Shown one piece after another: positions 6,893 through 52,104 of a DNA stretch of 64,000 bases; the stretch's first letter is position 1; each line of letters begins with the position of its first letter. The DNA lies in the IMG/VR virus record IMGVR_UViG_3300032236_001850, positions 370,510-434,509 of that record, one strand, 5' to 3'. The notes beneath the pieces are model-generated. The model saw only the letters and a list, made by a program, of their open reading frames with translations, was not told where the DNA came from and did not search any database. Both the position numbers and the translations under genes were made by a program.

Positions 6893-7282
6893 ATGTCCAG
6901 AGAGATACTGATACAAGAAAATTATCCTAATGAACCTTGGAAAATGCTCGTTTGTTGTATATTATTAAACCAATCCCATAATAGATCTGTACGACCGATT
7001 TTAGACGCCGTATTTGAATTTATTCCTGATCCTGATTCTGCAATCAAGTGTGATGTTGAAAGTCTAGCAGCGATCATAAAACCAACCGGTTTGTACAACG
7101 TAAAGGCTAGAAGAATAAAATGGATGAGTGTGGGATACAAAAAAGGCTTTAAAAGAGTTACCGATCTACCAGGAATAGGTTTATATGGTAATGAATCCTG
7201 GGAGATATTTGTTAATGGTAATCTCGACATAAAGCCAACGGATAAAAAGCTTAGAGCTTATTTGGATGCCGTTTTATTTTGA
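6893..7282 (+). CDS. HhH-GPD DNA glycosylase, MBD4-like
   Basis: PWKMLVCCILLNQ, LPGIGLYG HhH motif, DKKL ending; no Fe-S cluster. Confidence 0.75.
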   Translation: MSREILIQENYPNEPWKMLVCCILLNQSHNRSVRPILDAVFEFIPDPDSAIKCDVESLAAIIKPTGLYNVKARRIKWMSVGYKKGFKRVTDLPGIGLYGNESWEIFVNGNLDIKPTDKKLRAYLDAVLF

Positions 7283-8245
7283 TATTTTTACTCTTAGATT
7301 TATTGGTTCTTTAAGTACTGGATTTGAAACATAGAAAGGTTTTGCAACTTCACATTTCACAAACTTTTTATTTTCACCTAATGGTAGATATATTACATCA
7401 CCAGGTTTAAACATCTTGTGAATTTTTAATTTTTTACCATCTCTTTCGAATTCAAGATCCATTTCTATATGATCGTCAAATATTGCCCAATTATCTGTTC
7501 TACCAAATTTTTTGAATTTCTTATTAATGATTCTGAAAACCTTACCTGTAACAAATCCATCTTCCCCTAATTTGGATGCAAATTTTATAGGTTTACCTTT
7601 CTTAAGATTATAAGTTTTTATTTTTGAATTATCAAGACCAAAGCTTTCTTTTGGTACTTTCTTTGATTCTTCTTCTGTGAGAACTGTACCATCACTTGAT
7701 ATAAACAATTTAAAATCGTAGTTTTCCTTAGGTTTGGTAACAATATATTTGAGTTTTTCCTCATCGTATTTCACCTTACTTAATCCTGCATGAAATTCTA
7801 TTGACTTGTTTATTTCTTCGTGTGACTCGTCATCTTTAAAAATTCTTATAGTTCTTGCTATATTTTCAATAATTGGGATGTAAATCTGATTTCCCTCTTT
7901 TGCTGATTGCTCGGCTTTTAGATTAGCTGGAACATAAACATTTAGTGGATAAAATTTACCCATAAATTTAAAATGTGTTTCCATCATGGGATAACCGGTT
8001 GCTGTTTTGTCTGGGAATTTTAACCATTTAAGAACCTCATTCAGTCTATGGTCATATTCCTTTGCAAGTAAATCAGCGCAAGATTTTTTAATTTCCTCTA
8101 TTTTTCCGTTATCGAAATAATTAGACAACATGGTGGGAAAATCTATATTTTCTGGTTTGTAAAATCTTTCAATCTCCTCAACATCAACCTTTATGGTTAA
8201 TCTTGCTTCATTTATCCAACCCTGAAATTTTTTTAAATTGTTCAT
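7274..8245 (-). CDS. Hypothetical protein with CTS-like N-terminus
   Basis: MNNLKKFQGWINEA. Confidence 0.6.
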   Translation of the reverse strand: MNNLKKFQGWINEARLTIKVDVEEIERFYKPENIDFPTMLSNYFDNGKIEEIKKSCADLLAKEYDHRLNEVLKWLKFPDKTATGYPMMETHFKFMGKFYPLNVYVPANLKAEQSAKEGNQIYIPIIENIARTIRIFKDDESHEEINKSIEFHAGLSKVKYDEEKLKYIVTKPKENYDFKLFISSDGTVLTEEESKKVPKESFGLDNSKIKTYNLKKGKPIKFASKLGEDGFVTGKVFRIINKKFKKFGRTDNWAIFDDHIEMDLEFERDGKKLKIHKMFKPGDVIYLPLGENKKFVKCEVAKPFYVSNPVLKEPINLRVKISK

Positions 8246-25811: not shown

Positions 25812-27287
25812 ATGATGATATCAAAAAATGTACTGGACTTTTCCTCTTTTCTAAACGAAGCAAAATCCAATGCTGTTCAGGTAATTATGCTAATAGGAGG
25901 TGGAACCAATGAGTTCTCAAGATCCTTTGAAGCAGAGTGTAAGAAGAAAAAAATAAAGGTAACTGTATTTGACGTTGATCTTGCCGAAGTTACCAGAAAT
26001 AAAACCGGTGGTGGACACACAGTAACGGAAGGCAAAAAAATTGCTTCCATAGATCCATCAAATACTGTTGTTATTGCTAGATCTGGGTGTCTTAAGAGCA
26101 CACATAATAAGGAGCTTCTTATGGAGCTTGAAAATTCTAAATATTATGTTGTGAATAGATTAAGACCGATGGAAATATGTGAAAATAAATACATCACATC
26201 AGAGTTTCTTGAAAATTTAGATTTACCCGTTCCTAGATATTCTCTTATAGCATCTGAAGATCATATAGATGCAGCAGTTAAAAAAATCGGTGGTAAATTT
26301 CCAGTTGTTATGAAACTTCTTACTGGATCTCAAGGTATTGGTGTTTCCATTATTGATTCTCCAAATTCACTTAAATCTGTTTATCAAACAATTAAAAAAC
26401 TTGACGAGAAGAGTGAGGTATTAATACAGGAAAAAATAGAATCCAAATACGATCTAAGGATACATGTTATTATTAGAGACACAAGTATTAAAAATATAAA
26501 TAACACTGATAACTTCAAGGTTATTGGTGCTATGAGAAGAAATGCAGTTGGTAAGGATTTCAGAACAAATTATTCCCTTGGTGGAACGGTATCTAATGTT
26601 AAACTTAGTAAGGAAGTAATTGAAACAGCAATTAAAGCTGCTAGTGCAGTTGGATGTAATTGGTGTGGTGTTGATATAATGATCGACGAGAAAACTAAAA
26701 AACCTTACATATTGGAAGTTAATTCATCTCCTGGTACTGAGGGCATATCTAAAGCATTAGGTAAACCTATTGTGGATGATGTTATAAAATTTGTAATGAA
26801 CAGAGAAAATTGGGTTATACCTTCATCAGAAGTTGGTTACTTAGAGGTTATGGAAATAGAGGGTCTAGGTAAGGTGATAGCTAAATTTGATACTGGTAAT
26901 GGTACTCTTTGTTGTTGTTTACATGGTGATAAATTGGAGGTTAAAGGTAAAACCTTACATTTCCAAATAGGTCATAAAAAATTCACAAAAAAAATAACTG
27001 GATATACTGATGTTTCTGGTGGTATGCACACTAAAGGAACAAAGAAAATGCCAACGGTTAAGATGGATTTAAAATTTGATGGTGCATGGACAAAAGATGT
27101 TGATGTTGCAATAGTAGATAGAACAGATAAGAGCACACCATTTTTAGTTAATAGAAAAACTATGAGACAAATGAATGTTATAGTAAATCCAAACACAAAA
27201 TTCATAGTTACTGAAAATTTTGACGATAGATATAGTCAATATACATCAAAAGGAAAACCTCATGCAGGTATTGAATTTGAAAAATAA
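25812..27287 (+). CDS. rimK: RimK-family ATP-grasp ligase fused to a retropepsin-like (RimB / 'ATP-dependent Zn protease') domain
   Basis: GSQGIGV, DFRTNYSLGG, GVD, EVNSSPG; AKFDTG..LVNR protease motif; leader VLDFSSFLNEA; GATATATA at 25785. Confidence 0.8.
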   Translation: MMISKNVLDFSSFLNEAKSNAVQVIMLIGGGTNEFSRSFEAECKKKKIKVTVFDVDLAEVTRNKTGGGHTVTEGKKIASIDPSNTVVIARSGCLKSTHNKELLMELENSKYYVVNRLRPMEICENKYITSEFLENLDLPVPRYSLIASEDHIDAAVKKIGGKFPVVMKLLTGSQGIGVSIIDSPNSLKSVYQTIKKLDEKSEVLIQEKIESKYDLRIHVIIRDTSIKNINNTDNFKVIGAMRRNAVGKDFRTNYSLGGTVSNVKLSKEVIETAIKAASAVGCNWCGVDIMIDEKTKKPYILEVNSSPGTEGISKALGKPIVDDVIKFVMNRENWVIPSSEVGYLEVMEIEGLGKVIAKFDTGNGTLCCCLHGDKLEVKGKTLHFQIGHKKFTKKITGYTDVSGGMHTKGTKKMPTVKMDLKFDGAWTKDVDVAIVDRTDKSTPFLVNRKTMRQMNVIVNPNTKFIVTENFDDRYSQYTSKGKPHAGIEFEK

Positions 27288-27302: not shown

Positions 27303-27530
27303 ATGGAAAACTTAAGAGAATTCGGAAAAATTAACTCTAGATTAAGCGAGTCCGAAGAAAAAGCAGAAAAAGACGAAAAGATCCAAGTTTTGCTTTCTGG
27401 TGAAGATTTAAGTGATCTAACAAGAAAGATAGCGAAAAAAGCTTTATCTAAAGGTGAAGCTCCTGTATCTGTATCTCACTATGTTAGATCACTAATTAGA
27501 AGAGATCTTGGTAAAACTACTAAAGACTAA
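27303..27530 (+). CDS. Ribbon-helix-helix-like DNA-binding protein
   Basis: IQVLLS..DL..SVSHYVRSLIRRDL. Confidence 0.5.
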   Translation: MENLREFGKINSRLSESEEKAEKDEKIQVLLSGEDLSDLTRKIAKKALSKGEAPVSVSHYVRSLIRRDLGKTTKD

Positions 27531-28006
27531 TTCTTACCGAAAAAATCAGTGTATGATAAAACCCTACGGTCATTAGATTGTGGGGTTTCTTCTTGATTAC
27601 CAGTTTCCATCTCTGCATCATCAGGTTCAGATAAATCATCTTCATCCTCCTCGTCGTAATCTGCATCGTCGTCATCCTCATACTCCTCATCTGGATTTTC
27701 TACCTCCTCGTCATCCTCGTACTCTTCGTCTGGATTTTCTACCTCTTCATCATCATCGTAGTCTGAGTTGTCTTCATCTTCCTCATACTCTGAGTCGTCA
27801 TAGTCCTCATCCTCCTCGTCGTATTCATCATCATAATCCTCATCTTCTGATTCGTCGTCATATGTTTCATAATCATCGTTACCGTAGTCTGAGTCATCGG
27901 TATCATAAGTTTCATACTCCTCTCCATATTCACCTGATTGTGAATCGTCACCAGATAGATATGAATCGTCATTAATAAACTCGTCTTCTTCTTTTAAATG
28001 TTTCAT
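27527..28006 (-). CDS. Extremely acidic (Asp/Glu/Tyr) protein
   Basis: D/E-dominated; EEVENPDEEYEDD twice; ends VLSYTDFF. Confidence 0.7.
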   Translation of the reverse strand: MKHLKEEDEFINDDSYLSGDDSQSGEYGEEYETYDTDDSDYGNDDYETYDDESEDEDYDDEYDEEDEDYDDSEYEEDEDNSDYDDDEEVENPDEEYEDDEEVENPDEEYEDDDDADYDEEDEDDLSEPDDAEMETGNQEETPQSNDRRVLSYTDFFGKN

Positions 28007-29539: not shown

Positions 29540-30001
29540 GGGCCAACACGGTATTGATTGGCAGAGTTCGTTCTTTGAGATGCAGGCAGAGTTAGTATTG
29601 GAAACTCTTAAATAACCTATACAACGCTTTAAACGGCAAAAACAACGTTTGGGAAACTATCAACGCGTTTGGTACTCCCGTAGCTAAGACTGAGCTTGCG
29701 ATAGCGGCATAGTCGACCTGGTCTCACTTACCAAGGAAAGTAAAGGTGAAAATCCCGGGTGGCTCCCTCAAGACTTCGGTCGTCGTCAAGGCGTACCTTG
29801 AGCATCCAGATCCTAGAGATCTATACAGGGGGTGAAAGAAAACCGTTTTAGAAACATGTACGTAACATGTTGTTCCGACGTATGATACCTTTAGTCGTAA
29901 AAGAAGGGAATTATTTGGTAGCATTAGAAAAAGTTACTAAGCCTGTGAATGAGTCCTTTGGCTATCTGAACAAGACGAGGGTTCGAATCCCTCTTGGTCC
30001 A
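29540..30001 (+). ncRNA. ssrA: tmRNA (about 462 nt)
   Basis: Acceptor GGGCCAA/TTGGTCC-A with G3:U wobble; T-arm GAGGG-TTCGAAT-CCCTC; GCAGGC/GCCTGT helix; PK1 AGAGTT/AACTCT; tag ORF ends in AA-stop. Confidence 0.93.
29635..29712 (+). other. tmRNA tag reading frame GKNNVWETINAFGTPVAKTELAIAA*
   Basis: Resume codon GGC after TTAAAC, downstream of PK1. Confidence 0.8.
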
Positions 30002-30010
30002 CACGGAATT

Positions 30011-30040
30011 TCGAGGATCTTAATCGATCCTCGATTTTTT
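30011..30040 (+). terminator. Terminator after tmRNA
   Basis: TCGAGGATC-N6-GATCCTCGA-TTTTTT. Confidence 0.8.
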
Positions 30041-30067
30041 ATTAAATTAACTAAATCAAATCAAAAA

Positions 30068-30448
30068 ATGGAAGCTGTAATTATTTTATTAGTGTGTATC
30101 GTATTACCTGTTGTTATAATGGTAATAGGTATTAAGAAATCGAAAAAAGAAAGAATCGAGGAAAGAGACGAAATGTTTTATGAAGGTGACGTAAAGTTTG
30201 GAGAAAATGCTGACGGTACACCAATAGAAATCAATGACACTCCTGCTCCTATAGATGCTGTTGAAGAGGTTACTAAAATATTAACTGATGAGGTTGAAAA
30301 GATAACAAAGCCTAAAAAGAAAAAACCAGGTAGAAAGAAAAAATCTGAATTTCCTATAGAACCAGTAGCACCTAAACCAAAATCAAAAAGAGGTAGAAAA
30401 CCAAAGAATAAAGATAAGAAAGGTGGAGATCAGATGTTATTAAGCTAA
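30068..30448 (+). CDS. Membrane-anchored protein with Lys-rich tail
   Basis: True start is ATG 30068 (MEAVIILLV...); the track's extension overlaps the tmRNA. Confidence 0.65.
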   Translation: MEAVIILLVCIVLPVVIMVIGIKKSKKERIEERDEMFYEGDVKFGENADGTPIEINDTPAPIDAVEEVTKILTDEVEKITKPKKKKPGRKKKSEFPIEPVAPKPKSKRGRKPKNKDKKGGDQMLLS

Positions 30449-30539: not shown

Positions 30540-30980
30540 ATGAAATTTTTAATCGCATTATTATTTTTTATATCCTTTGGATATTCACAAAAGTCTGGTA
30601 TTTGTGGTGCATCCTTTTCATATTCTAAGAAAAGTAACAGTATCCTACTAAATACCCCTATTTCATTATTTCAAACCGAGGATGCAGATTACCACGTTAG
30701 AGTTAGGCTGAGAAGAGAAGTTCCGATTGGTGCGATTAATGGTGTTGAATATGGAAACATGATAGAACAACCATTTTTTGAATATGATGGTTATAAAACA
30801 TCCATGTTTTGGGCATTTAGCACATTAACATCAGTAAAACATAAAGTAAAAAAGAAAGGCACAATAGACACTAATTTTGAACTATTTTACACCAAAAAAG
30901 GTGAGTATTTTATGACAATAGATAAAATGTGCTATGATAATGTAATAGAATCAAATGAGGTTTCAATAACAATAAAATAA
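30540..30980 (+). CDS. Secreted hypothetical protein
   Basis: Signal peptide ending GYS|Q. Confidence 0.55.
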   Translation: MKFLIALLFFISFGYSQKSGICGASFSYSKKSNSILLNTPISLFQTEDADYHVRVRLRREVPIGAINGVEYGNMIEQPFFEYDGYKTSMFWAFSTLTSVKHKVKKKGTIDTNFELFYTKKGEYFMTIDKMCYDNVIESNEVSITIK

Positions 30981-31717
30981 TGGAAGCATTTTTAGAAAAG
31001 ATAAATGGCGAGTGGTTGGATGATTTTGTTTATATAGCAAAACAACCATTAATAGATATGGGATATAAAATAGTCCCGTATGATGGTGATGATTTGGAAC
31101 ACACGCTAGTGATGAGAAATCCAGATCCCAACACTGATATTTGTATAGGATCTGTGCAGGGAACTGAAAGATTTTTTCAAGCCTGTGGAGTTGAGATCCC
31201 TAAATATTTGGGTTATCCTGAGCAGCTTAGAAAGTATCTTGGTAGAAAAATAGAAACAACAACCTTTGGGGAACTTGGTACAGATTTTCCATATTTTGTG
31301 AAGCCTGCTGAATCTATTAAAATGTTTACCGGTGATGTTGTGGATAATTCTAAACATCTTGAATACCTGGTTGCTTTTGATAAATGCCTTCCAGATACAC
31401 CCGTTATAAAATCAGAGGTCATGGAATTTCTCTCAGAATATAGAGTTTTTGTTAGTCATGGTAAAATCTATGACGTTAAACACTACAAAGGAACATGGAA
31501 GGAACATATTAGCTCTAATATCATTGAGTTAATGGTTAAGGATTACACAGACTGTCCTTCTGCATACACATTGGATGTGGGTCTGAATTCAAAAGGTCTA
31601 ACAAAGTTAGTTGAGGTGAATGATATGTGGGCTATAGGATCTTATGGTATGGATGGAAGGGACTATGCATTATTGTGTGCCAGAAGAATGAAAGAAATAT
31701 TAAAAAATTATAAATAA
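30980..31717 (+). CDS. ATP-grasp protein (DUF4343/R2K-like)
   Basis: FVKP, SEYRVFV, YTLDVG, LVEVND. Confidence 0.75.
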   Translation: MEAFLEKINGEWLDDFVYIAKQPLIDMGYKIVPYDGDDLEHTLVMRNPDPNTDICIGSVQGTERFFQACGVEIPKYLGYPEQLRKYLGRKIETTTFGELGTDFPYFVKPAESIKMFTGDVVDNSKHLEYLVAFDKCLPDTPVIKSEVMEFLSEYRVFVSHGKIYDVKHYKGTWKEHISSNIIELMVKDYTDCPSAYTLDVGLNSKGLTKLVEVNDMWAIGSYGMDGRDYALLCARRMKEILKNYK

Positions 31718-50581: not shown

Positions 50582-51553
50582 TTATTTTAGCTTACCTACT
50601 AATTTCTTTATCTTTTCTGGATCTTCCAATAGTCCTGGATTCTGTGCATCATAATCCATGAATTTCTTGCTTAATTTTGGATTTTCTAGAACCGCAGTTA
50701 TTAGATCCATAGCTTTATTGTCCGGTATATTTACTATGGCTTTAAAGAACGTCTTCATGTCAAGGTCATCAAAAAGGGAAACTATTCTTTTGCATGCTTC
50801 AATTGATAATTCATCATTAATAGATGTTCCATATGTTTTTACGAAAGTTGGGATGTTGACATTCCCTTCCAATATCGATTTTATAGCTGATGGTCCTAAA
50901 TTTATTGCCGATGCATATAAGATGTCCTCAATTATATTTATAACGTCCAATTTTTCTTCTCTTGTATAGAATGGATGATCCTTGGTTATAACGGTAGCAT
51001 GAAATCCTCCGTTATAATCATTAACTGTATCCACATTGGGGTTACCATATATCGTTACATAACCAGGTGCAGGAGCGCTCAATCTTATTGCCATATTATC
51101 AATTAGTTCCTTTGCTGAATCACGTCGAGATGAATATCCTCTGGTTCCTCTATAATGAGGCCATCCGCTAGAAGTGCTCTCAGCTGGTAAGCTTATATCT
51201 GCTTTTCTAAAAGTTCTTTTATTTATAAGATTGCTTATAATATTAACAGTTGATGTTCTTCTTTCTGGTCTTTGTGTAACAAGACCATTTTCATCGTCTC
51301 TATATAAATCAAAATCACTAAATGGAACTAGATCGAATTTCTTTTTTAGCTCAGCAAACTCTGGTATCTGAAGAAGCTCCTCAAACTTAGGAAGATATTT
51401 GGTGATTTCCTTTTTAGGTGGTTTCTTCATACCAGCAAATCCCGACTTCTTAAGAATGTTATTAACCTTCTGTAGCTTTTTAAAATTTTCTATATCTAGT
51501 GGCTTTTCTTCCTCGTTTTCGTTCATGAGGAATTCTTTGAATTTTTTAATCAC
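50582..51553 (-). CDS. Hypothetical protein with CTS-like N-terminus
   Basis: MIKKFKEFLMNE; GATATATA on minus strand at 51572-51579. Confidence 0.65.
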   Translation of the reverse strand: MIKKFKEFLMNENEEEKPLDIENFKKLQKVNNILKKSGFAGMKKPPKKEITKYLPKFEELLQIPEFAELKKKFDLVPFSDFDLYRDDENGLVTQRPERRTSTVNIISNLINKRTFRKADISLPAESTSSGWPHYRGTRGYSSRRDSAKELIDNMAIRLSAPAPGYVTIYGNPNVDTVNDYNGGFHATVITKDHPFYTREEKLDVINIIEDILYASAINLGPSAIKSILEGNVNIPTFVKTYGTSINDELSIEACKRIVSLFDDLDMKTFFKAIVNIPDNKAMDLITAVLENPKLSKKFMDYDAQNPGLLEDPEKIKKLVGKLK

Positions 51554-51596
51554 AGCAATTCTTATTTTATCTATATATCGAAAAAATTGAATATCA

Positions 51597-51629
51597 TTTT
51601 TTTATTTCGAATCTTTTTATTATATTTGC
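51597..51629 (+). promoter_or_regulatory. Bacteroidota-type promoter
   Basis: TTTTTTTATTTCG-N11-TATATTTGC. Confidence 0.7.
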
Positions 51630-52104
51630 ATAAAATAATAAATAATGGGAACATACACAGGAATTCATTTGGGTGTCTTCATAAAGGTGCCAATAAGGGA
51701 AATAGAAATCACAGAAACCAAATTTGTAGATCCCGAGACAGGTAAAACAAAGAAAACCAAATTCTGTCCGGATACTGGTAAAGAATTTAAAACAGAAACT
51801 TTTACTAGAAAAGAGAAAGATTACCCATCTGCTTATATAGAGAAGGAAGGTTATAGAGAGGATGAATTTTGGCAACCTGCATATCATGGAGGTGGAGAGG
51901 AGTTTCAGGTTTTTTTATTGAATTCCAAAAATCCTAAGTATGTTATAGATGCTGATGTTGATGATCTTGATTGTATAAACTTCATCGGTAGAAACAATAA
52001 CTATGAATCGATAGTTGAGGAATTCACTAAGGAATACGAAAAATATATTAACTATTATAAGGAGCAGTATGGAGAAATCCAAATCTGCTACGGTCTAACA
52101 ATTT

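What the first reader, a model, noticed from the sequence alone, without database searches (positions are those of the whole stretch)
29540..30001. Phage tmRNA with an unusually long 25-residue tag and enlarged body
Seen: a complete tRNA-like domain with G3:U, about 462 nt, tag GKNNVWETINAFGTPVAKTELAIAA, and no encoded CCA. Known: Bacteroidota tags are about 9-10 aa (GENNYALAA type). Both ends match the host pattern but about 15 residues are inserted. Inference: the extra segment may recruit a phage adaptor or redirect tagged proteins, and the RNA may replace host tmRNA cut by defences.
Basis: partly seen in the sequence, partly recalled or inferred. Interest (0 to 1): 0.65.

Follow-up and report, generated by a model that had tools for sequence, protein, structure and literature searches.

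The report
Huge-phage tmRNA with long tag
A 434-kb bacteriophage carries its own ribosome-rescue RNA (tmRNA) and its partner protein SmpB, and the RNA encodes a 25-residue tag, almost three times as long as the 9-residue tag of the likely Bacteroidota hosts; related giant phages share this trait, and standard annotation tools miss the gene.

Summary
Window 29540-30001 (+) is a complete one-piece tmRNA gene of 462 nt. It has an acceptor stem with G3:U, a T-arm, pseudoknot PK1, a 12-nt spacer and a GGC resume codon at nt 96. The frame reads GKNNVWETINAFGTPVAKTELAIAA and ends at TAG. No CCA is encoded. ARAGORN at default settings and Rfam at its gathering score both miss the gene (RF00023 41.4 bits against a cut-off of 47, E 6e-15).

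The long tag is real and is not a miscalled resume codon. The GGC lies at the same offset as in 27 Bacteroidota tmRNAs, whose tags are all 7-10 aa. All 15 distinct huge-phage tmRNAs and about 30 distinct metagenomic tag frames found through PK1 give tags of 20-26 aa. The distance from GGC to the stop is always a multiple of three, and the C-terminal Ala codons drift synonymously.

The genome is a virus record with terminal repeats. It also encodes SmpB, a CCA-adding enzyme, a cellular-type ClpP and a ClpC/ClpA-like ATPase. The viral SmpBs form one group apart from bacterial ones.

It is best read as a phage-owned trans-translation module with a lineage-specific degron. Delivery of tagged proteins to the phage Clp machine is inferred and not shown. 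tmRNA and SmpB in huge phages are already published, so this is a new variant of a known kind.

The parts
29540..30001 (+). tmRNA (ssrA) gene, mature form without CCA, 462 nt
   Evidence: RF00023 full-length match at 41.4 bits, E 6e-15. Homologues 85-93% identical lie in three IMG/VR contigs. RNAalifold finds the acceptor stem, helix H2 and the T-arm, with compensatory changes.
29540..29546 (+). 5' strand of the acceptor stem (GGGCCAA), with G3 of the G3:U pair
   Evidence: Read directly from the sequence. G3:U is invariant in 7 of 7 clade relatives, and position 4 changes C:G to U:A in G001.
29588..29622 (+). Pseudoknot PK1: stem AGAGTT 29588-29593 with AACTCT 29603-29608, and stem GTATTGG 29595-29601 with CCTATAC 29616-29622
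   Evidence: Read directly from the sequence. The second stem is the one aligned by RF00023 and the first is found by RNAalifold. The segment is nearly invariant in relatives, and it served as an anchor independent of the tag for 51 metagenome loci.
29623..29634 (+). 12-nt single-stranded spacer ending in UUUAAAC, the context upstream of the resume codon (U at -5, A at -4)
   Evidence: every distinct phage tmRNA has U[AU][AG]A[CU] directly before GGN. ARAGORN at -ps60 labels tttaaacGGCaaaaacaa as the resume consensus.
29635..29712 (+). Tag reading frame: resume codon GGC, 25 codons (GKNNVWETINAFGTPVAKTELAIAA), stop TAG
   Evidence: The frame is kept in all relatives, the stop changes between TAG and TAA at the same position, amino-acid replacements are conservative, and the Ala codons 22, 24 and 25 drift synonymously.
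29647..29684 (+). Predicted interrupted hairpin inside the tag frame (tag nt 13-50, codons 5-17)
   Evidence: RNAalifold. Stem positions vary at 8 of 28 sites, unpaired positions at 6 of 10, and the rest of the frame at 26 of 37. Pair 24:40 covaries (TA 5, CG 6, TG 6, GT 1). The folding energy is not unusual (z = -0.14). This part is tentative.
29717..29736 (+). Hairpin just after the stop codon (CCTGGT / ACCA-A-GG), in the position of helix 5
   Evidence: Read directly from the sequence. In G005 the closing T:A pair is replaced by C:G (alignment).
29977..29993 (+). T-arm: stem GAGGG/CCCTC and loop TTCGAAT
   Evidence: Three stem pairs change on both sides in G002 or G005.
29994..30001 (+). 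3' strand of the acceptor stem (TTGGTCC) and discriminator A; no CCA follows (CAC)
   Evidence: Read directly from the sequence. Most Bacteroidota tmRNAs fetched here also lack an encoded CCA, and the phage encodes the head domain of a CCA-adding enzyme.
30011..30040 (+). Intrinsic-terminator-like hairpin (9 pairs) followed by a T run, 10 nt after the mature 3' end

Best explanation
This is a functional, phage-encoded one-piece tmRNA. Together with the phage's own SmpB (outside the window, at genome position 51.4 kb) it forms a phage-owned trans-translation module. The proposed mechanism is inferred from what is established for tmRNA. The RNA is transcribed up to the terminator at 30011-30040. 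Its ends are trimmed, and CCA is added by the host enzyme or by the phage-encoded one. Host AlaRS charges it with alanine through the G3:U pair. SmpB and EF-Tu deliver it to ribosomes stalled on broken mRNA. Translation resumes at GGC (29635) and adds A-GKNNVWETINAFGTPVAKTELAIAA before stopping at TAG. The tag is a lineage-specific long degron. Its non-polar ...A[IV]AA end resembles ClpX/ClpA-type ssrA degrons. The conserved middle part (VW-x-x-IN-x-FG-x-P) probably adds a second recognition site, most likely for the phage's own ClpC/ClpA-like ATPase working with the phage ClpP, or it reflects a conserved RNA hairpin in the coding region. Shown here: the gene anatomy, the position of the resume codon, conservation of the frame, the SmpB partner, co-occurrence with Clp genes, and the split between phage and bacterial SmpBs. 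Inferred: expression, charging, tagging and which protease reads the tag.
For: Anatomy:
- Acceptor stem with G3:U, T-arm, H2, PK1, a 12-nt spacer, the frame, and a hairpin after the stop.
- Compensatory changes occur in the acceptor stem, the T-arm and a 3' hairpin among 7 relatives; 22 predicted pairs have changes on both sides.

Resume codon:
- GGC is at nt 96. The resume codon lies at nt 94-101 in 27 of 27 Bacteroidota tmRNAs and at nt 94-98 in 15 of 15 distinct phage tmRNAs, each after a U-A-rich motif.

Coding constraint:
- The frame from GGC reaches a hydrophobic end (...AA...VA or ...LV) in every relative. Its lengths are 63, 66, 69, 72, 78 and 81 nt, all multiples of three.
- Second codon positions vary least (8, 4, 9 variable sites at positions 1, 2, 3). 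Replacements are conservative. Ala codons 22, 24 and 25 use 3, 3 and 3 different synonymous codons.
- A sub-family keeps V, N, I and P through synonymous codon changes.

Partner and pathway genes:
- SmpB scores 158.6 bits with an intact basic C-terminal tail.
- Also present: a CCA-adding enzyme head domain, a cellular-type ClpP (247 bits to NF011091, against 66 bits to the head-maturation model) and a 708-aa double-AAA+ Clp ATPase with a G-F loop (SGF here, VGF in clade B).

Lineage pattern:
- 9 of 9 huge-phage records that encode SmpB and are at least 90% complete carry a tmRNA. 9 of 9 carry ClpP and 7 of 9 carry the Clp ATPase.
- In clade B the ATPase, the tmRNA and SmpB lie within about 6 kb.
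- All 51 distinct viral SmpBs fall on one side of a supported branch (95) from 80 Bacteroidota SmpBs.

Genetic code:
- The standard code applies and TAG is used as a stop. No suppressor tRNA is among the 31 tRNAs.

Precedents:
- Huge phages with tmRNA and SmpB (PMC7162821).
- The 25-aa tag of Mycobacteriophage Bxz1 against the host's 12 aa.
- The 27-aa Mycoplasma tag read by Lon (PMC8403727).
Against:
- RF00023 scores below its gathering cut-off, and ARAGORN fails at default settings.
- The tRNA-like domain departs from the Bacteroidota consensus (for example AAGAC instead of UGGAC before the T-arm), so charging and SmpB binding are assumed.
- The central tag codons (GTT TGG ... ATC AAC ... 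TTT GGT) are invariant at the nucleotide level in the main family. Selection on RNA and selection on the peptide therefore cannot be fully separated there.
- The link to the phage Clp machine rests only on co-occurrence and loose clustering. In this genome the four genes are dispersed (28, 51, 235 and 400 kb), and two complete relatives lack the ATPase.
- The host is unknown.
Confidence: 0.82

Rival explanations
1. The true resume codon lies downstream, for example GCU at 29683, giving AKTELAIAA (9 aa). The segment 29635-29682 would then be untranslated structured RNA, a hairpin inserted between PK1 and the real frame.
For: ARAGORN calls an internal resume codon for the relative G005 (EVEYAVAA). 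A hairpin is predicted at 29647-29684 with one covarying pair and low variability in its stems. A 9-aa tag starting with Ala would look canonical.
Against: GGC is 12 nt after PK1 and at the same offset (nt 96) as in all 27 Bacteroidota tmRNAs, with U at -5 and A at -4. The downstream candidate would lie 60 nt from PK1, behind CCGUA. Codon 17 is not conserved (Ala, Ser, Asn or Thr), whereas GGC is invariant. Indels upstream of codon 17 are all multiples of three, and the frame from GGC always ends in the hydrophobic tail. Synonymous changes occur at codons 4, 5, 7, 9, 10 and 15.
Confidence: 0.05
2. The RNA is not used for tagging. It acts as a decoy or inhibitor that titrates host SmpB, EF-Tu or AlaRS, or it is a decaying passenger gene or a remnant of an integration site.
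For: It departs from the family consensus (41 bits, against 102-170 bits for bacterial tmRNAs). A molecule consisting only of the tRNA-like domain, in mycobacteriophage DS6A, has been discussed as a possible inhibitor (PMC4131195). tmRNA genes are common phage integration sites (general knowledge).
Against: The gene is full length with both ends, not a 3' fragment. The frame is under peptide-type constraint across dozens of variants. The phage keeps an intact SmpB of its own, and 9 of 9 complete relatives keep both genes. Compensatory changes maintain the helices. The record has terminal repeats and no sign of a bacterial flank.
Confidence: 0.06
3. The RNA does tag proteins, but the long tag is not a degradation signal. 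It could mark, stabilise, localise or report stalled products, for instance as a sensor of the host's translational state.
For: The middle motif is conserved beyond what a C-terminal degron needs. Sister clades end in ...VNVA...VVVA or ...LELV rather than ...LAA. Al-Shayeb et al. mention sensing of stalled ribosomes by phages through tmRNA.
Against: In clade A the C-terminal A-x-AA is invariant while its codons drift, as expected for a degron read at the C-terminus. The phage carries ClpP and an unfoldase. All long tags studied so far (Mycoplasma) are degrons.
Confidence: 0.07

Closest known systems
Bacteroidota tmRNA (RF00023; tags of the GENNYALAA type)
   Same: One-piece architecture. The resume codon encodes Gly (GGN) at nt ~96 after a U-A-rich spacer. 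G3:U is present, CCA is usually not encoded, and the tag ends in non-polar ...A-x-AA. SmpB is of the Bacteroidota type (45-58% identity).
   Different: The tag is 25 aa, against 7-10 aa in 27 of 27 genomes. The Rfam score is 41 bits, against 102-170 bits. The tRNA-like domain and H2 sequences have diverged. The gene is encoded by a virus together with its own SmpB.
tmRNA and SmpB of huge phages (Al-Shayeb et al. 2020, PMC7162821)
   Same: Same kind of element in the same kind of genome. A relative, ALT_PHAGE_35_11, with a near-identical SmpB N-terminus and Bacteroidetes as its best-hit phylum, is in that paper's supplement.
   Different: That paper reports presence only, using ARAGORN. ARAGORN detects 2 of the 21 tmRNAs collected here and calls a short tag for one of those two. 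Tag length, its conservation and the co-occurrence with Clp genes are not described there. No tmRNA feature occurs in the supplement files held as text, though some of those files are cut.
Mycobacteriophage Bxz1-group tmRNA
   Same: A phage-borne tmRNA whose tag (ATDTDATVTDAEIEAFFAEEAAALV, 25 aa) is about twice as long as the host's (ADSHQRDYALAA, 12 aa), according to ARAGORN's built-in table. It is listed among phages with ssrA in PMC4131195.
   Different: The host phylum, tag sequence and phage lineage are unrelated. I did not check whether SmpB or Clp genes accompany the Bxz1 tmRNA.
Mycoplasma/Mesoplasma long ssrA tag read by Lon
   Same: An extended tag (about 27 aa) whose extra residues changed which protease recognises it (PMC8403727). 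This is the best-studied case of what a long tag can do.
   Different: No Lon gene is present in this phage. The candidate reader here is a ClpC/ClpA-like ATPase with ClpP. The tag sequences are unrelated.
E. coli / Caulobacter ssrA tag with its SspB adaptor and ClpXP (general knowledge)
   Same: A two-part logic: a C-terminal ...LAA or ...VAA motif read by the unfoldase, and an upstream segment read by a second factor. The clade A endings E[FY]AVAA resemble the Caulobacter ending ...EEFAVAA.
   Different: No SspB homologue is present in the phage. The upstream segment is much longer and unrelated in sequence.

Membership tests
tmRNA (ssrA, RF00023) | tRNA-like domain: 7-bp acceptor stem closing the 5' and 3' ends, with the G3:U alanine identity pair, discriminator A and a T-arm with a TTCGA-type loop | tested here: met
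   G3:U is invariant and there are compensatory changes in the acceptor stem and the T-stem among 7 relatives.
tmRNA (ssrA, RF00023) | Score at or above the Rfam gathering threshold for the covariance model | tested here: inconclusive
   The window copy scores 41.4 bits against a cut-off of 47, E 6e-15, over the full model. Close homologues of the same clade pass the cut-off (G010 51.6, G024 48.3, G002 64.3, G005 59.3 bits).
tmRNA (ssrA, RF00023) | Pseudoknot PK1, then a short single-stranded spacer, then a resume codon with no start codon or Shine-Dalgarno sequence | tested here: met
   PK1 stems at 29588-29622, a 12-nt spacer, and GGC at nt 96, as in 27 Bacteroidota tmRNAs.
tmRNA (ssrA, RF00023) | Short internal frame ending in a non-polar C-terminus and a stop codon, conserved as a peptide | tested here: met
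   The tag ends ...ELAIAA followed by TAG. The frame and its end are kept in all relatives, with synonymous drift. Its length (25 aa) lies in the upper ~5% of tags in ARAGORN's table.
tmRNA (ssrA, RF00023) | A cognate SmpB in the same genome | tested here: met
   PF01668 158.6 bits and NF003843 162.6 bits (cut-off 130), at genome position 51392-51805.
tmRNA (ssrA, RF00023) | Alanylation, entry into stalled ribosomes and tagging of nascent chains | not testable with these tools
   This needs biochemistry or in vivo reporters. The expression check was not possible.
ClpP-dependent Hsp100 unfoldase (ClpA/ClpC type), as candidate reader of the tag | Two AAA+ modules and a ClpP-docking [LIV]-G-[FL] loop in D2 | tested here: inconclusive
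   Both AAA+ modules, a UVR-type middle motif and ClpB_D2-small are present, and no Clp_N domain hit was found. The loop reads S-G-F in this phage and V-G-F in clade B. Scores are below the equivalog cut-offs for ClpA, ClpB and ClpC. Binding to ClpP or to the tag was not tested.
SspB-type ssrA adaptor | An SspB domain protein encoded by the phage | tested here: not met
   PF04386 gives no match at E <= 1 in the 434-kb genome.

The most novel reading that the evidence does not exclude
A lineage of 270-434-kb phages of Bacteroidota runs a private tagging and degradation circuit. A co-diverged SmpB-tmRNA pair appends a phage-specific 20-26-residue degron. The conserved middle motif of that degron (VW-x-x-IN-x-FG-x-P in this clade) is read by the phage's own ClpC-like ATPase, which lacks an N-domain, working with the phage ClpP. 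Rescue of ribosomes and disposal of truncated proteins during infection would then no longer depend on the host ClpXP/SspB system. The same codons also fold into a conserved hairpin within the reading frame, which may time or regulate tag translation.
Probability: 0.25. Interest if true: 0.7.

Novelty: new variant of a known kind. Interest (0 to 1): 0.55.

Why it matters
Trans-translation is usually treated as a host housekeeping system that phages merely depend on. Here a whole lineage of giant phages keeps its own SmpB-tmRNA pair. Its tag is two to three times the host length and conserved as a peptide, and it sits alongside a phage ClpP and unfoldase. Three consequences follow.

1. The question of what ribosome rescue and tag-directed proteolysis contribute to infection by large phages becomes testable.
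2. A natural tag and protease pair that may be orthogonal to the host's becomes available, of the kind that made the Mesoplasma Lon/ssrA pair useful in synthetic biology.
3. ARAGORN at default settings found only 2 of 21 such genes, and Rfam at its gathering score missed the window copy. Published counts of phage tmRNAs are therefore likely to be underestimates.

Tried and rejected
- **ARAGORN at default and relaxed settings** on the window, the region and the whole genome found no correct tmRNA call. It was used only for its resume-consensus and tag read-out.
- **Rfam at the gathering score** gave no match. A search at the E-value threshold was needed.
- **BLAST of the tmRNA against 50,697 GenBank phage records** gave no match.
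I did not try to get round this.
- **Not found in the phage genome:** Lon (PF05362), AlaRS (PF01411) and SspB (PF04386). A Lon-directed tag, phage-encoded charging and an SspB-type adaptor are therefore not supported.
- **An alternative genetic code reading through TAG** was rejected. All three stop codons are used, ORFs of at least 150 aa cover 71% of the genome under code 11, relatives have TAA at the same position, and there is no suppressor tRNA.
- **Folding energy of the tag frame** is not lower than that of shuffled sequences (z = -0.14 for the window). The hairpin inside the frame rests only on the pattern of variable sites and on one covarying pair.
- **A formal count of structure pairs with a hand-written pseudoknot string** was left out, to avoid sending a long typed string. 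The per-pair counts come and from my script.
- **Host identification below phylum level** was not achieved. The bacterial SmpBs nearest to the phage's are only 45-58% identical and are spread over Cytophagales, Bacteroidales and Flavobacteriales.

Full report
**1. What is at the coordinates**

The window is the last 64 kb of a 434,509-bp IMG/VR virus record with direct terminal repeats, rated 100% complete. Its G+C content is 35%. ORFs of at least 150 aa cover 71% of the genome under the standard bacterial code, and all three stop codons are in use (TAA 236, TAG 51, TGA 25).

- GGGCCAA pairs with TTGGTCC and includes G3:U.
- The discriminator is A and is followed by CAC, so no CCA is encoded.
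- The T-arm is GAGGG-TTCGAAT-CCCTC.
- The internal frame GGC...GCA TAG reads GKNNVWETINAFGTPVAKTELAIAA.

A terminator-like hairpin with a T run follows at 30011-30040.

Standard detectors miss the gene. ARAGORN finds no tmRNA in the window, the region or the genome. Rfam at its gathering score finds nothing. At an E-value threshold, RF00023 matches end to end (model 1-374) at 41.4 bits, E 6e-15, just under the cut-off of 47. With its thresholds lowered to 60%, ARAGORN picks out 'tttaaacGGCaaaaacaa' as the resume consensus and reports this same 25-residue tag.

**2. It is a real, conserved RNA**

An exact-pattern scan with the 3' end found three IMG/VR contigs whose tmRNA is 85-93% identical over its full length.

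I then used the phage's SmpB to reach other viral records and searched 25 of them with RF00023.
- 20 of the 25 have a tmRNA.
- All 9 records that are at least 90% complete (270-430 kb) have one.
- 16 of the 25 score above the Rfam cut-off.

In an alignment of the seven distinct clade members, RNAalifold recovers the acceptor stem (G3:U in 7 of 7), the long helix H2, the T-arm and a 3' hairpin. Twenty-two pairs change on both sides while staying paired.

PK1 can be read directly from the sequence: AGAGTT/AACTCT (29588-29593 with 29603-29608) and GTATTGG/CCTATAC (29595-29601 with 29616-29622).

**3. The resume codon, and therefore the tag length**

This is the point on which the finding stands or falls, and four lines of evidence agree.

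(a) Position. GGC lies 12 nt after PK1 at nt 96 of the RNA. I fetched tmRNAs from 27 Bacteroidota genomes (RF00023 102-170 bits, 365-404 nt). In them the resume codon, also Gly, lies at nt 94-101 after a similar U-A-rich spacer, and the tags are 7-10 aa in 27 of 27. ARAGORN's built-in table agrees: every Bacteroidota entry is 8-9 aa, apart from one stray Porphyromonas entry.

(b) Context. All 15 distinct phage tmRNAs have U[AU][AG]A[CU] directly before GGN at nt 94-98.

(c) Phase. From that codon the frame reaches a hydrophobic C-terminus and a stop in every phage sequence. The frame lengths are 63, 66, 69, 72, 78 and 81 nt, so every length difference is a multiple of three.

(d) Substitution pattern.
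- In clade A the variable sites fall 8, 4 and 9 at codon positions 1, 2 and 3.
- Replacements are conservative (A/S/T, D/E, I/V, F/L/Y, K/Q/E), and the stop alternates between TAG and TAA.
- A metagenome scan anchored on PK1, and so independent of the tag, gave 51 loci and about 30 distinct frames, all of 22, 23 or 25 codons.
- The Ala codons 22, 24 and 25 drift among GCA, GCG, GCT and GCC while the residue stays the same.
- A sub-family (GKKANVWEAINNFGAPVTAKQAIAA) keeps V, I, N and P through synonymous codon changes and carries compensating in-frame indels.

The alternative is a resume codon at GCU 29683, giving AKTELAIAA. ARAGORN makes an analogous call for relative G005 (EVEYAVAA). That site would lie 60 nt from PK1 behind CCGUA, and the codon is not conserved (Ala, Ser, Asn or Thr). 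I give this reading about 5%.

**4. Long tags are a lineage trait**

| Group | Tag | Length |
|---|---|---|
| Clade A (this phage, G001, G010, G023, G024, the 373-kb G002-4, the 270-kb G005) | GK[NT]NVW[ED]xIN[AS]FGxPxxxxE[LFY]A[IV]AA | 25 aa |
| Clade B (nine records of 105-322 kb) | GN[IV]L[ND]KM...VNVA | 21-22 aa |
| G013 | GNVYNNMEVAGLLATSKVAA | 20 aa |
| G022 | GESYIDADGNITFNGQSVEFADLELV | 26 aa |
| Metagenomic family sharing the clade A PK1 | GEKSTFTFEDAMSLVGxEYAxAA | 23 aa |

'Host-like ends with 15 residues inserted' therefore describes clade A only loosely. This is a diverged family of long tags.

In ARAGORN's table of about 1,285 known tags, the mode is 9-12 aa, about 5% are 20 aa or longer, and the maximum is 31. 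Mycobacteriophage Bxz1 has a 25-aa tag against its host's 12 aa. A phage tag much longer than the host's is therefore not without precedent.

**5. Genomic partners**

The phage encodes the following, all outside the window:
- SmpB at genome position 51392-51805 (158.6 bits, above NCBIfam's equivalog cut-off, with its basic C-terminal tail intact).
- The head domain of a CCA-adding enzyme 3 kb upstream of SmpB.
- 31 tRNAs, none a suppressor.
- A ClpP of cellular type (247 bits to ClpP model NF011091, against 66 bits to the ClpP-related head-maturation model).
- A 708-aa double-AAA+ Hsp100 ATPase without a Clp_N domain. It has a UVR-type middle motif and a G-F loop in D2, where ClpA and ClpC dock onto ClpP. 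The loop reads SGF here and VGF in clade B. The role of this loop is from general knowledge of the family.

No Lon, AlaRS or SspB was found.

Among the nine complete relatives, ClpP is present in 9 and the ATPase in 7. In clade B the ATPase, the tmRNA and SmpB lie within about 6 kb of each other. In this phage the genes are dispersed.

**6. Origin**

The nearest named relatives of the phage SmpB are Bacteroidota, at 45-58% identity. In a tree of 131 SmpBs, all 51 distinct viral sequences fall on one side of a supported branch (SH-aLRT 95) from 80 Bacteroidota sequences. This fits one old acquisition followed by descent within phages better than repeated recent capture. The tree is unrooted, built with the quick method on 145 columns, and samples only Bacteroidota on the bacterial side.

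The phage tmRNAs also score far lower against RF00023 than the bacterial ones, and their tRNA-like domains differ from the bacterial consensus. This is consistent with co-divergence of the RNA and its SmpB.

A relative, ALT_PHAGE_35_11 (238 kb, mine tailings impoundment, Manitoba), was published by Al-Shayeb et al. 2020. Its SmpB is annotated there, and Bacteroidetes is its best-hit phylum. That paper states that huge phages carry tmRNAs and SmpB, which it identified with ARAGORN. On my set ARAGORN detects 2 of 21.

**7. Mechanism**

The most likely reading is ordinary trans-translation carried out by a phage-owned SmpB-tmRNA pair. Host AlaRS would charge the RNA through G3:U. The host or phage CCA-adding enzyme would complete the 3' end. 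The 25-residue tag would act as a degron.

In clade A the invariant A-x-AA end with drifting codons points to a C-terminal recognition signal. The conserved middle motif needs a second explanation, and I see two candidates.
- It is a binding site for a second factor. The phage's own ClpC/ClpA-like ATPase with ClpP is the obvious candidate, by analogy with the Mycoplasma tag, whose extension switched recognition to Lon (PMC8403727).
- It reflects an RNA-level constraint. The codons GTT TGG GA / ATC AA / TTT GGT / CCC form the stems of a predicted hairpin at 29647-29684. Stem positions vary at 8 of 28 sites, against 6 of 10 unpaired positions and 26 of 37 in the rest of the frame. One pair covaries (TA, CG, TG, GT). 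However, the folding energy is not unusual.

The two constraints may act together.

**8. Verdict**

The kind of element, tmRNA with SmpB in huge phages, is already known. What is new is the conserved long-tag family, the co-occurring phage Clp machinery, and the failure of standard detectors. I rate it a new variant of a known kind, of moderate interest.

Noticed in passing
window 25812-27287 (+), 27527-28006 (-), 30980-31717 (+): The tmRNA gene is flanked by two ATP-grasp peptide-ligase-type genes: a RimK-like one (PF08443, 113 bits) and an R2K-clade one (PF18299, 139 bits). Next to the RimK-like gene is a 159-aa ORF made almost entirely of Asp, Glu and Tyr. RimK adds glutamates to the C-terminus of ribosomal protein S6 (general knowledge), so this may be another module acting on protein C-termini or on translation.
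   Followed up: partly
window 29647-29684: A predicted hairpin lies inside the tag reading frame. Its stems coincide with the residues invariant at the nucleotide level (V5 W6, I9 N10, F12 G13, P15), and one pair covaries. Comparable central hairpins are predicted in the 23-aa tag family and other tag families.
   Followed up: partly
L009 (genome 49892-53305): 1232-1483 and 1913-2983: Directly upstream of SmpB, and overlapping its start, is an 83-aa ORF whose first ~27 residues match peptidyl-tRNA hydrolase Pth2 (weak, 25-27 bits). Directly downstream is a 356-aa ORF with HTH domains and a faint LAGLIDADG hit, possibly a homing endonuclease.
   Followed up: partly
genome 210278-228985 (outside the window): An array of 31 tRNA genes covers most amino acids. 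There are three tRNA-Met and no suppressor tRNA.
   Followed up: no
L235 (G007 55000-66000) 7080-7460 (-): In the clade B phage G007, a SET-domain protein (PF00856, 49.5 bits) lies between the tmRNA and SmpB.
   Followed up: no
L257, L258, L262 (metagenome loci): Three metagenomic relatives have GAC (Asp) instead of GGC at the resume position (DEKSTFTFEDAM...). This shows that the first tag residue can change within the family.
   Followed up: no
window 29671-29685 (tag residues AFGTP): The 21-aa tag of Caldilinea aerophila (Chloroflexota) in ARAGORN's table, AKNTGKAFAFGTPATSVALAA, shares the pentapeptide AFGTP with this tag. This may be chance or convergence.
   Followed up: no
window 29867-30448 (+): The mechanical ORF list shows a 193-aa frame overlapping the 3' third of the tmRNA. 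The real gene most likely starts at the ATG at 30068 and encodes a small protein with an N-terminal membrane helix and a Lys/Pro-rich tail. It has no Pfam match.
   Followed up: partly
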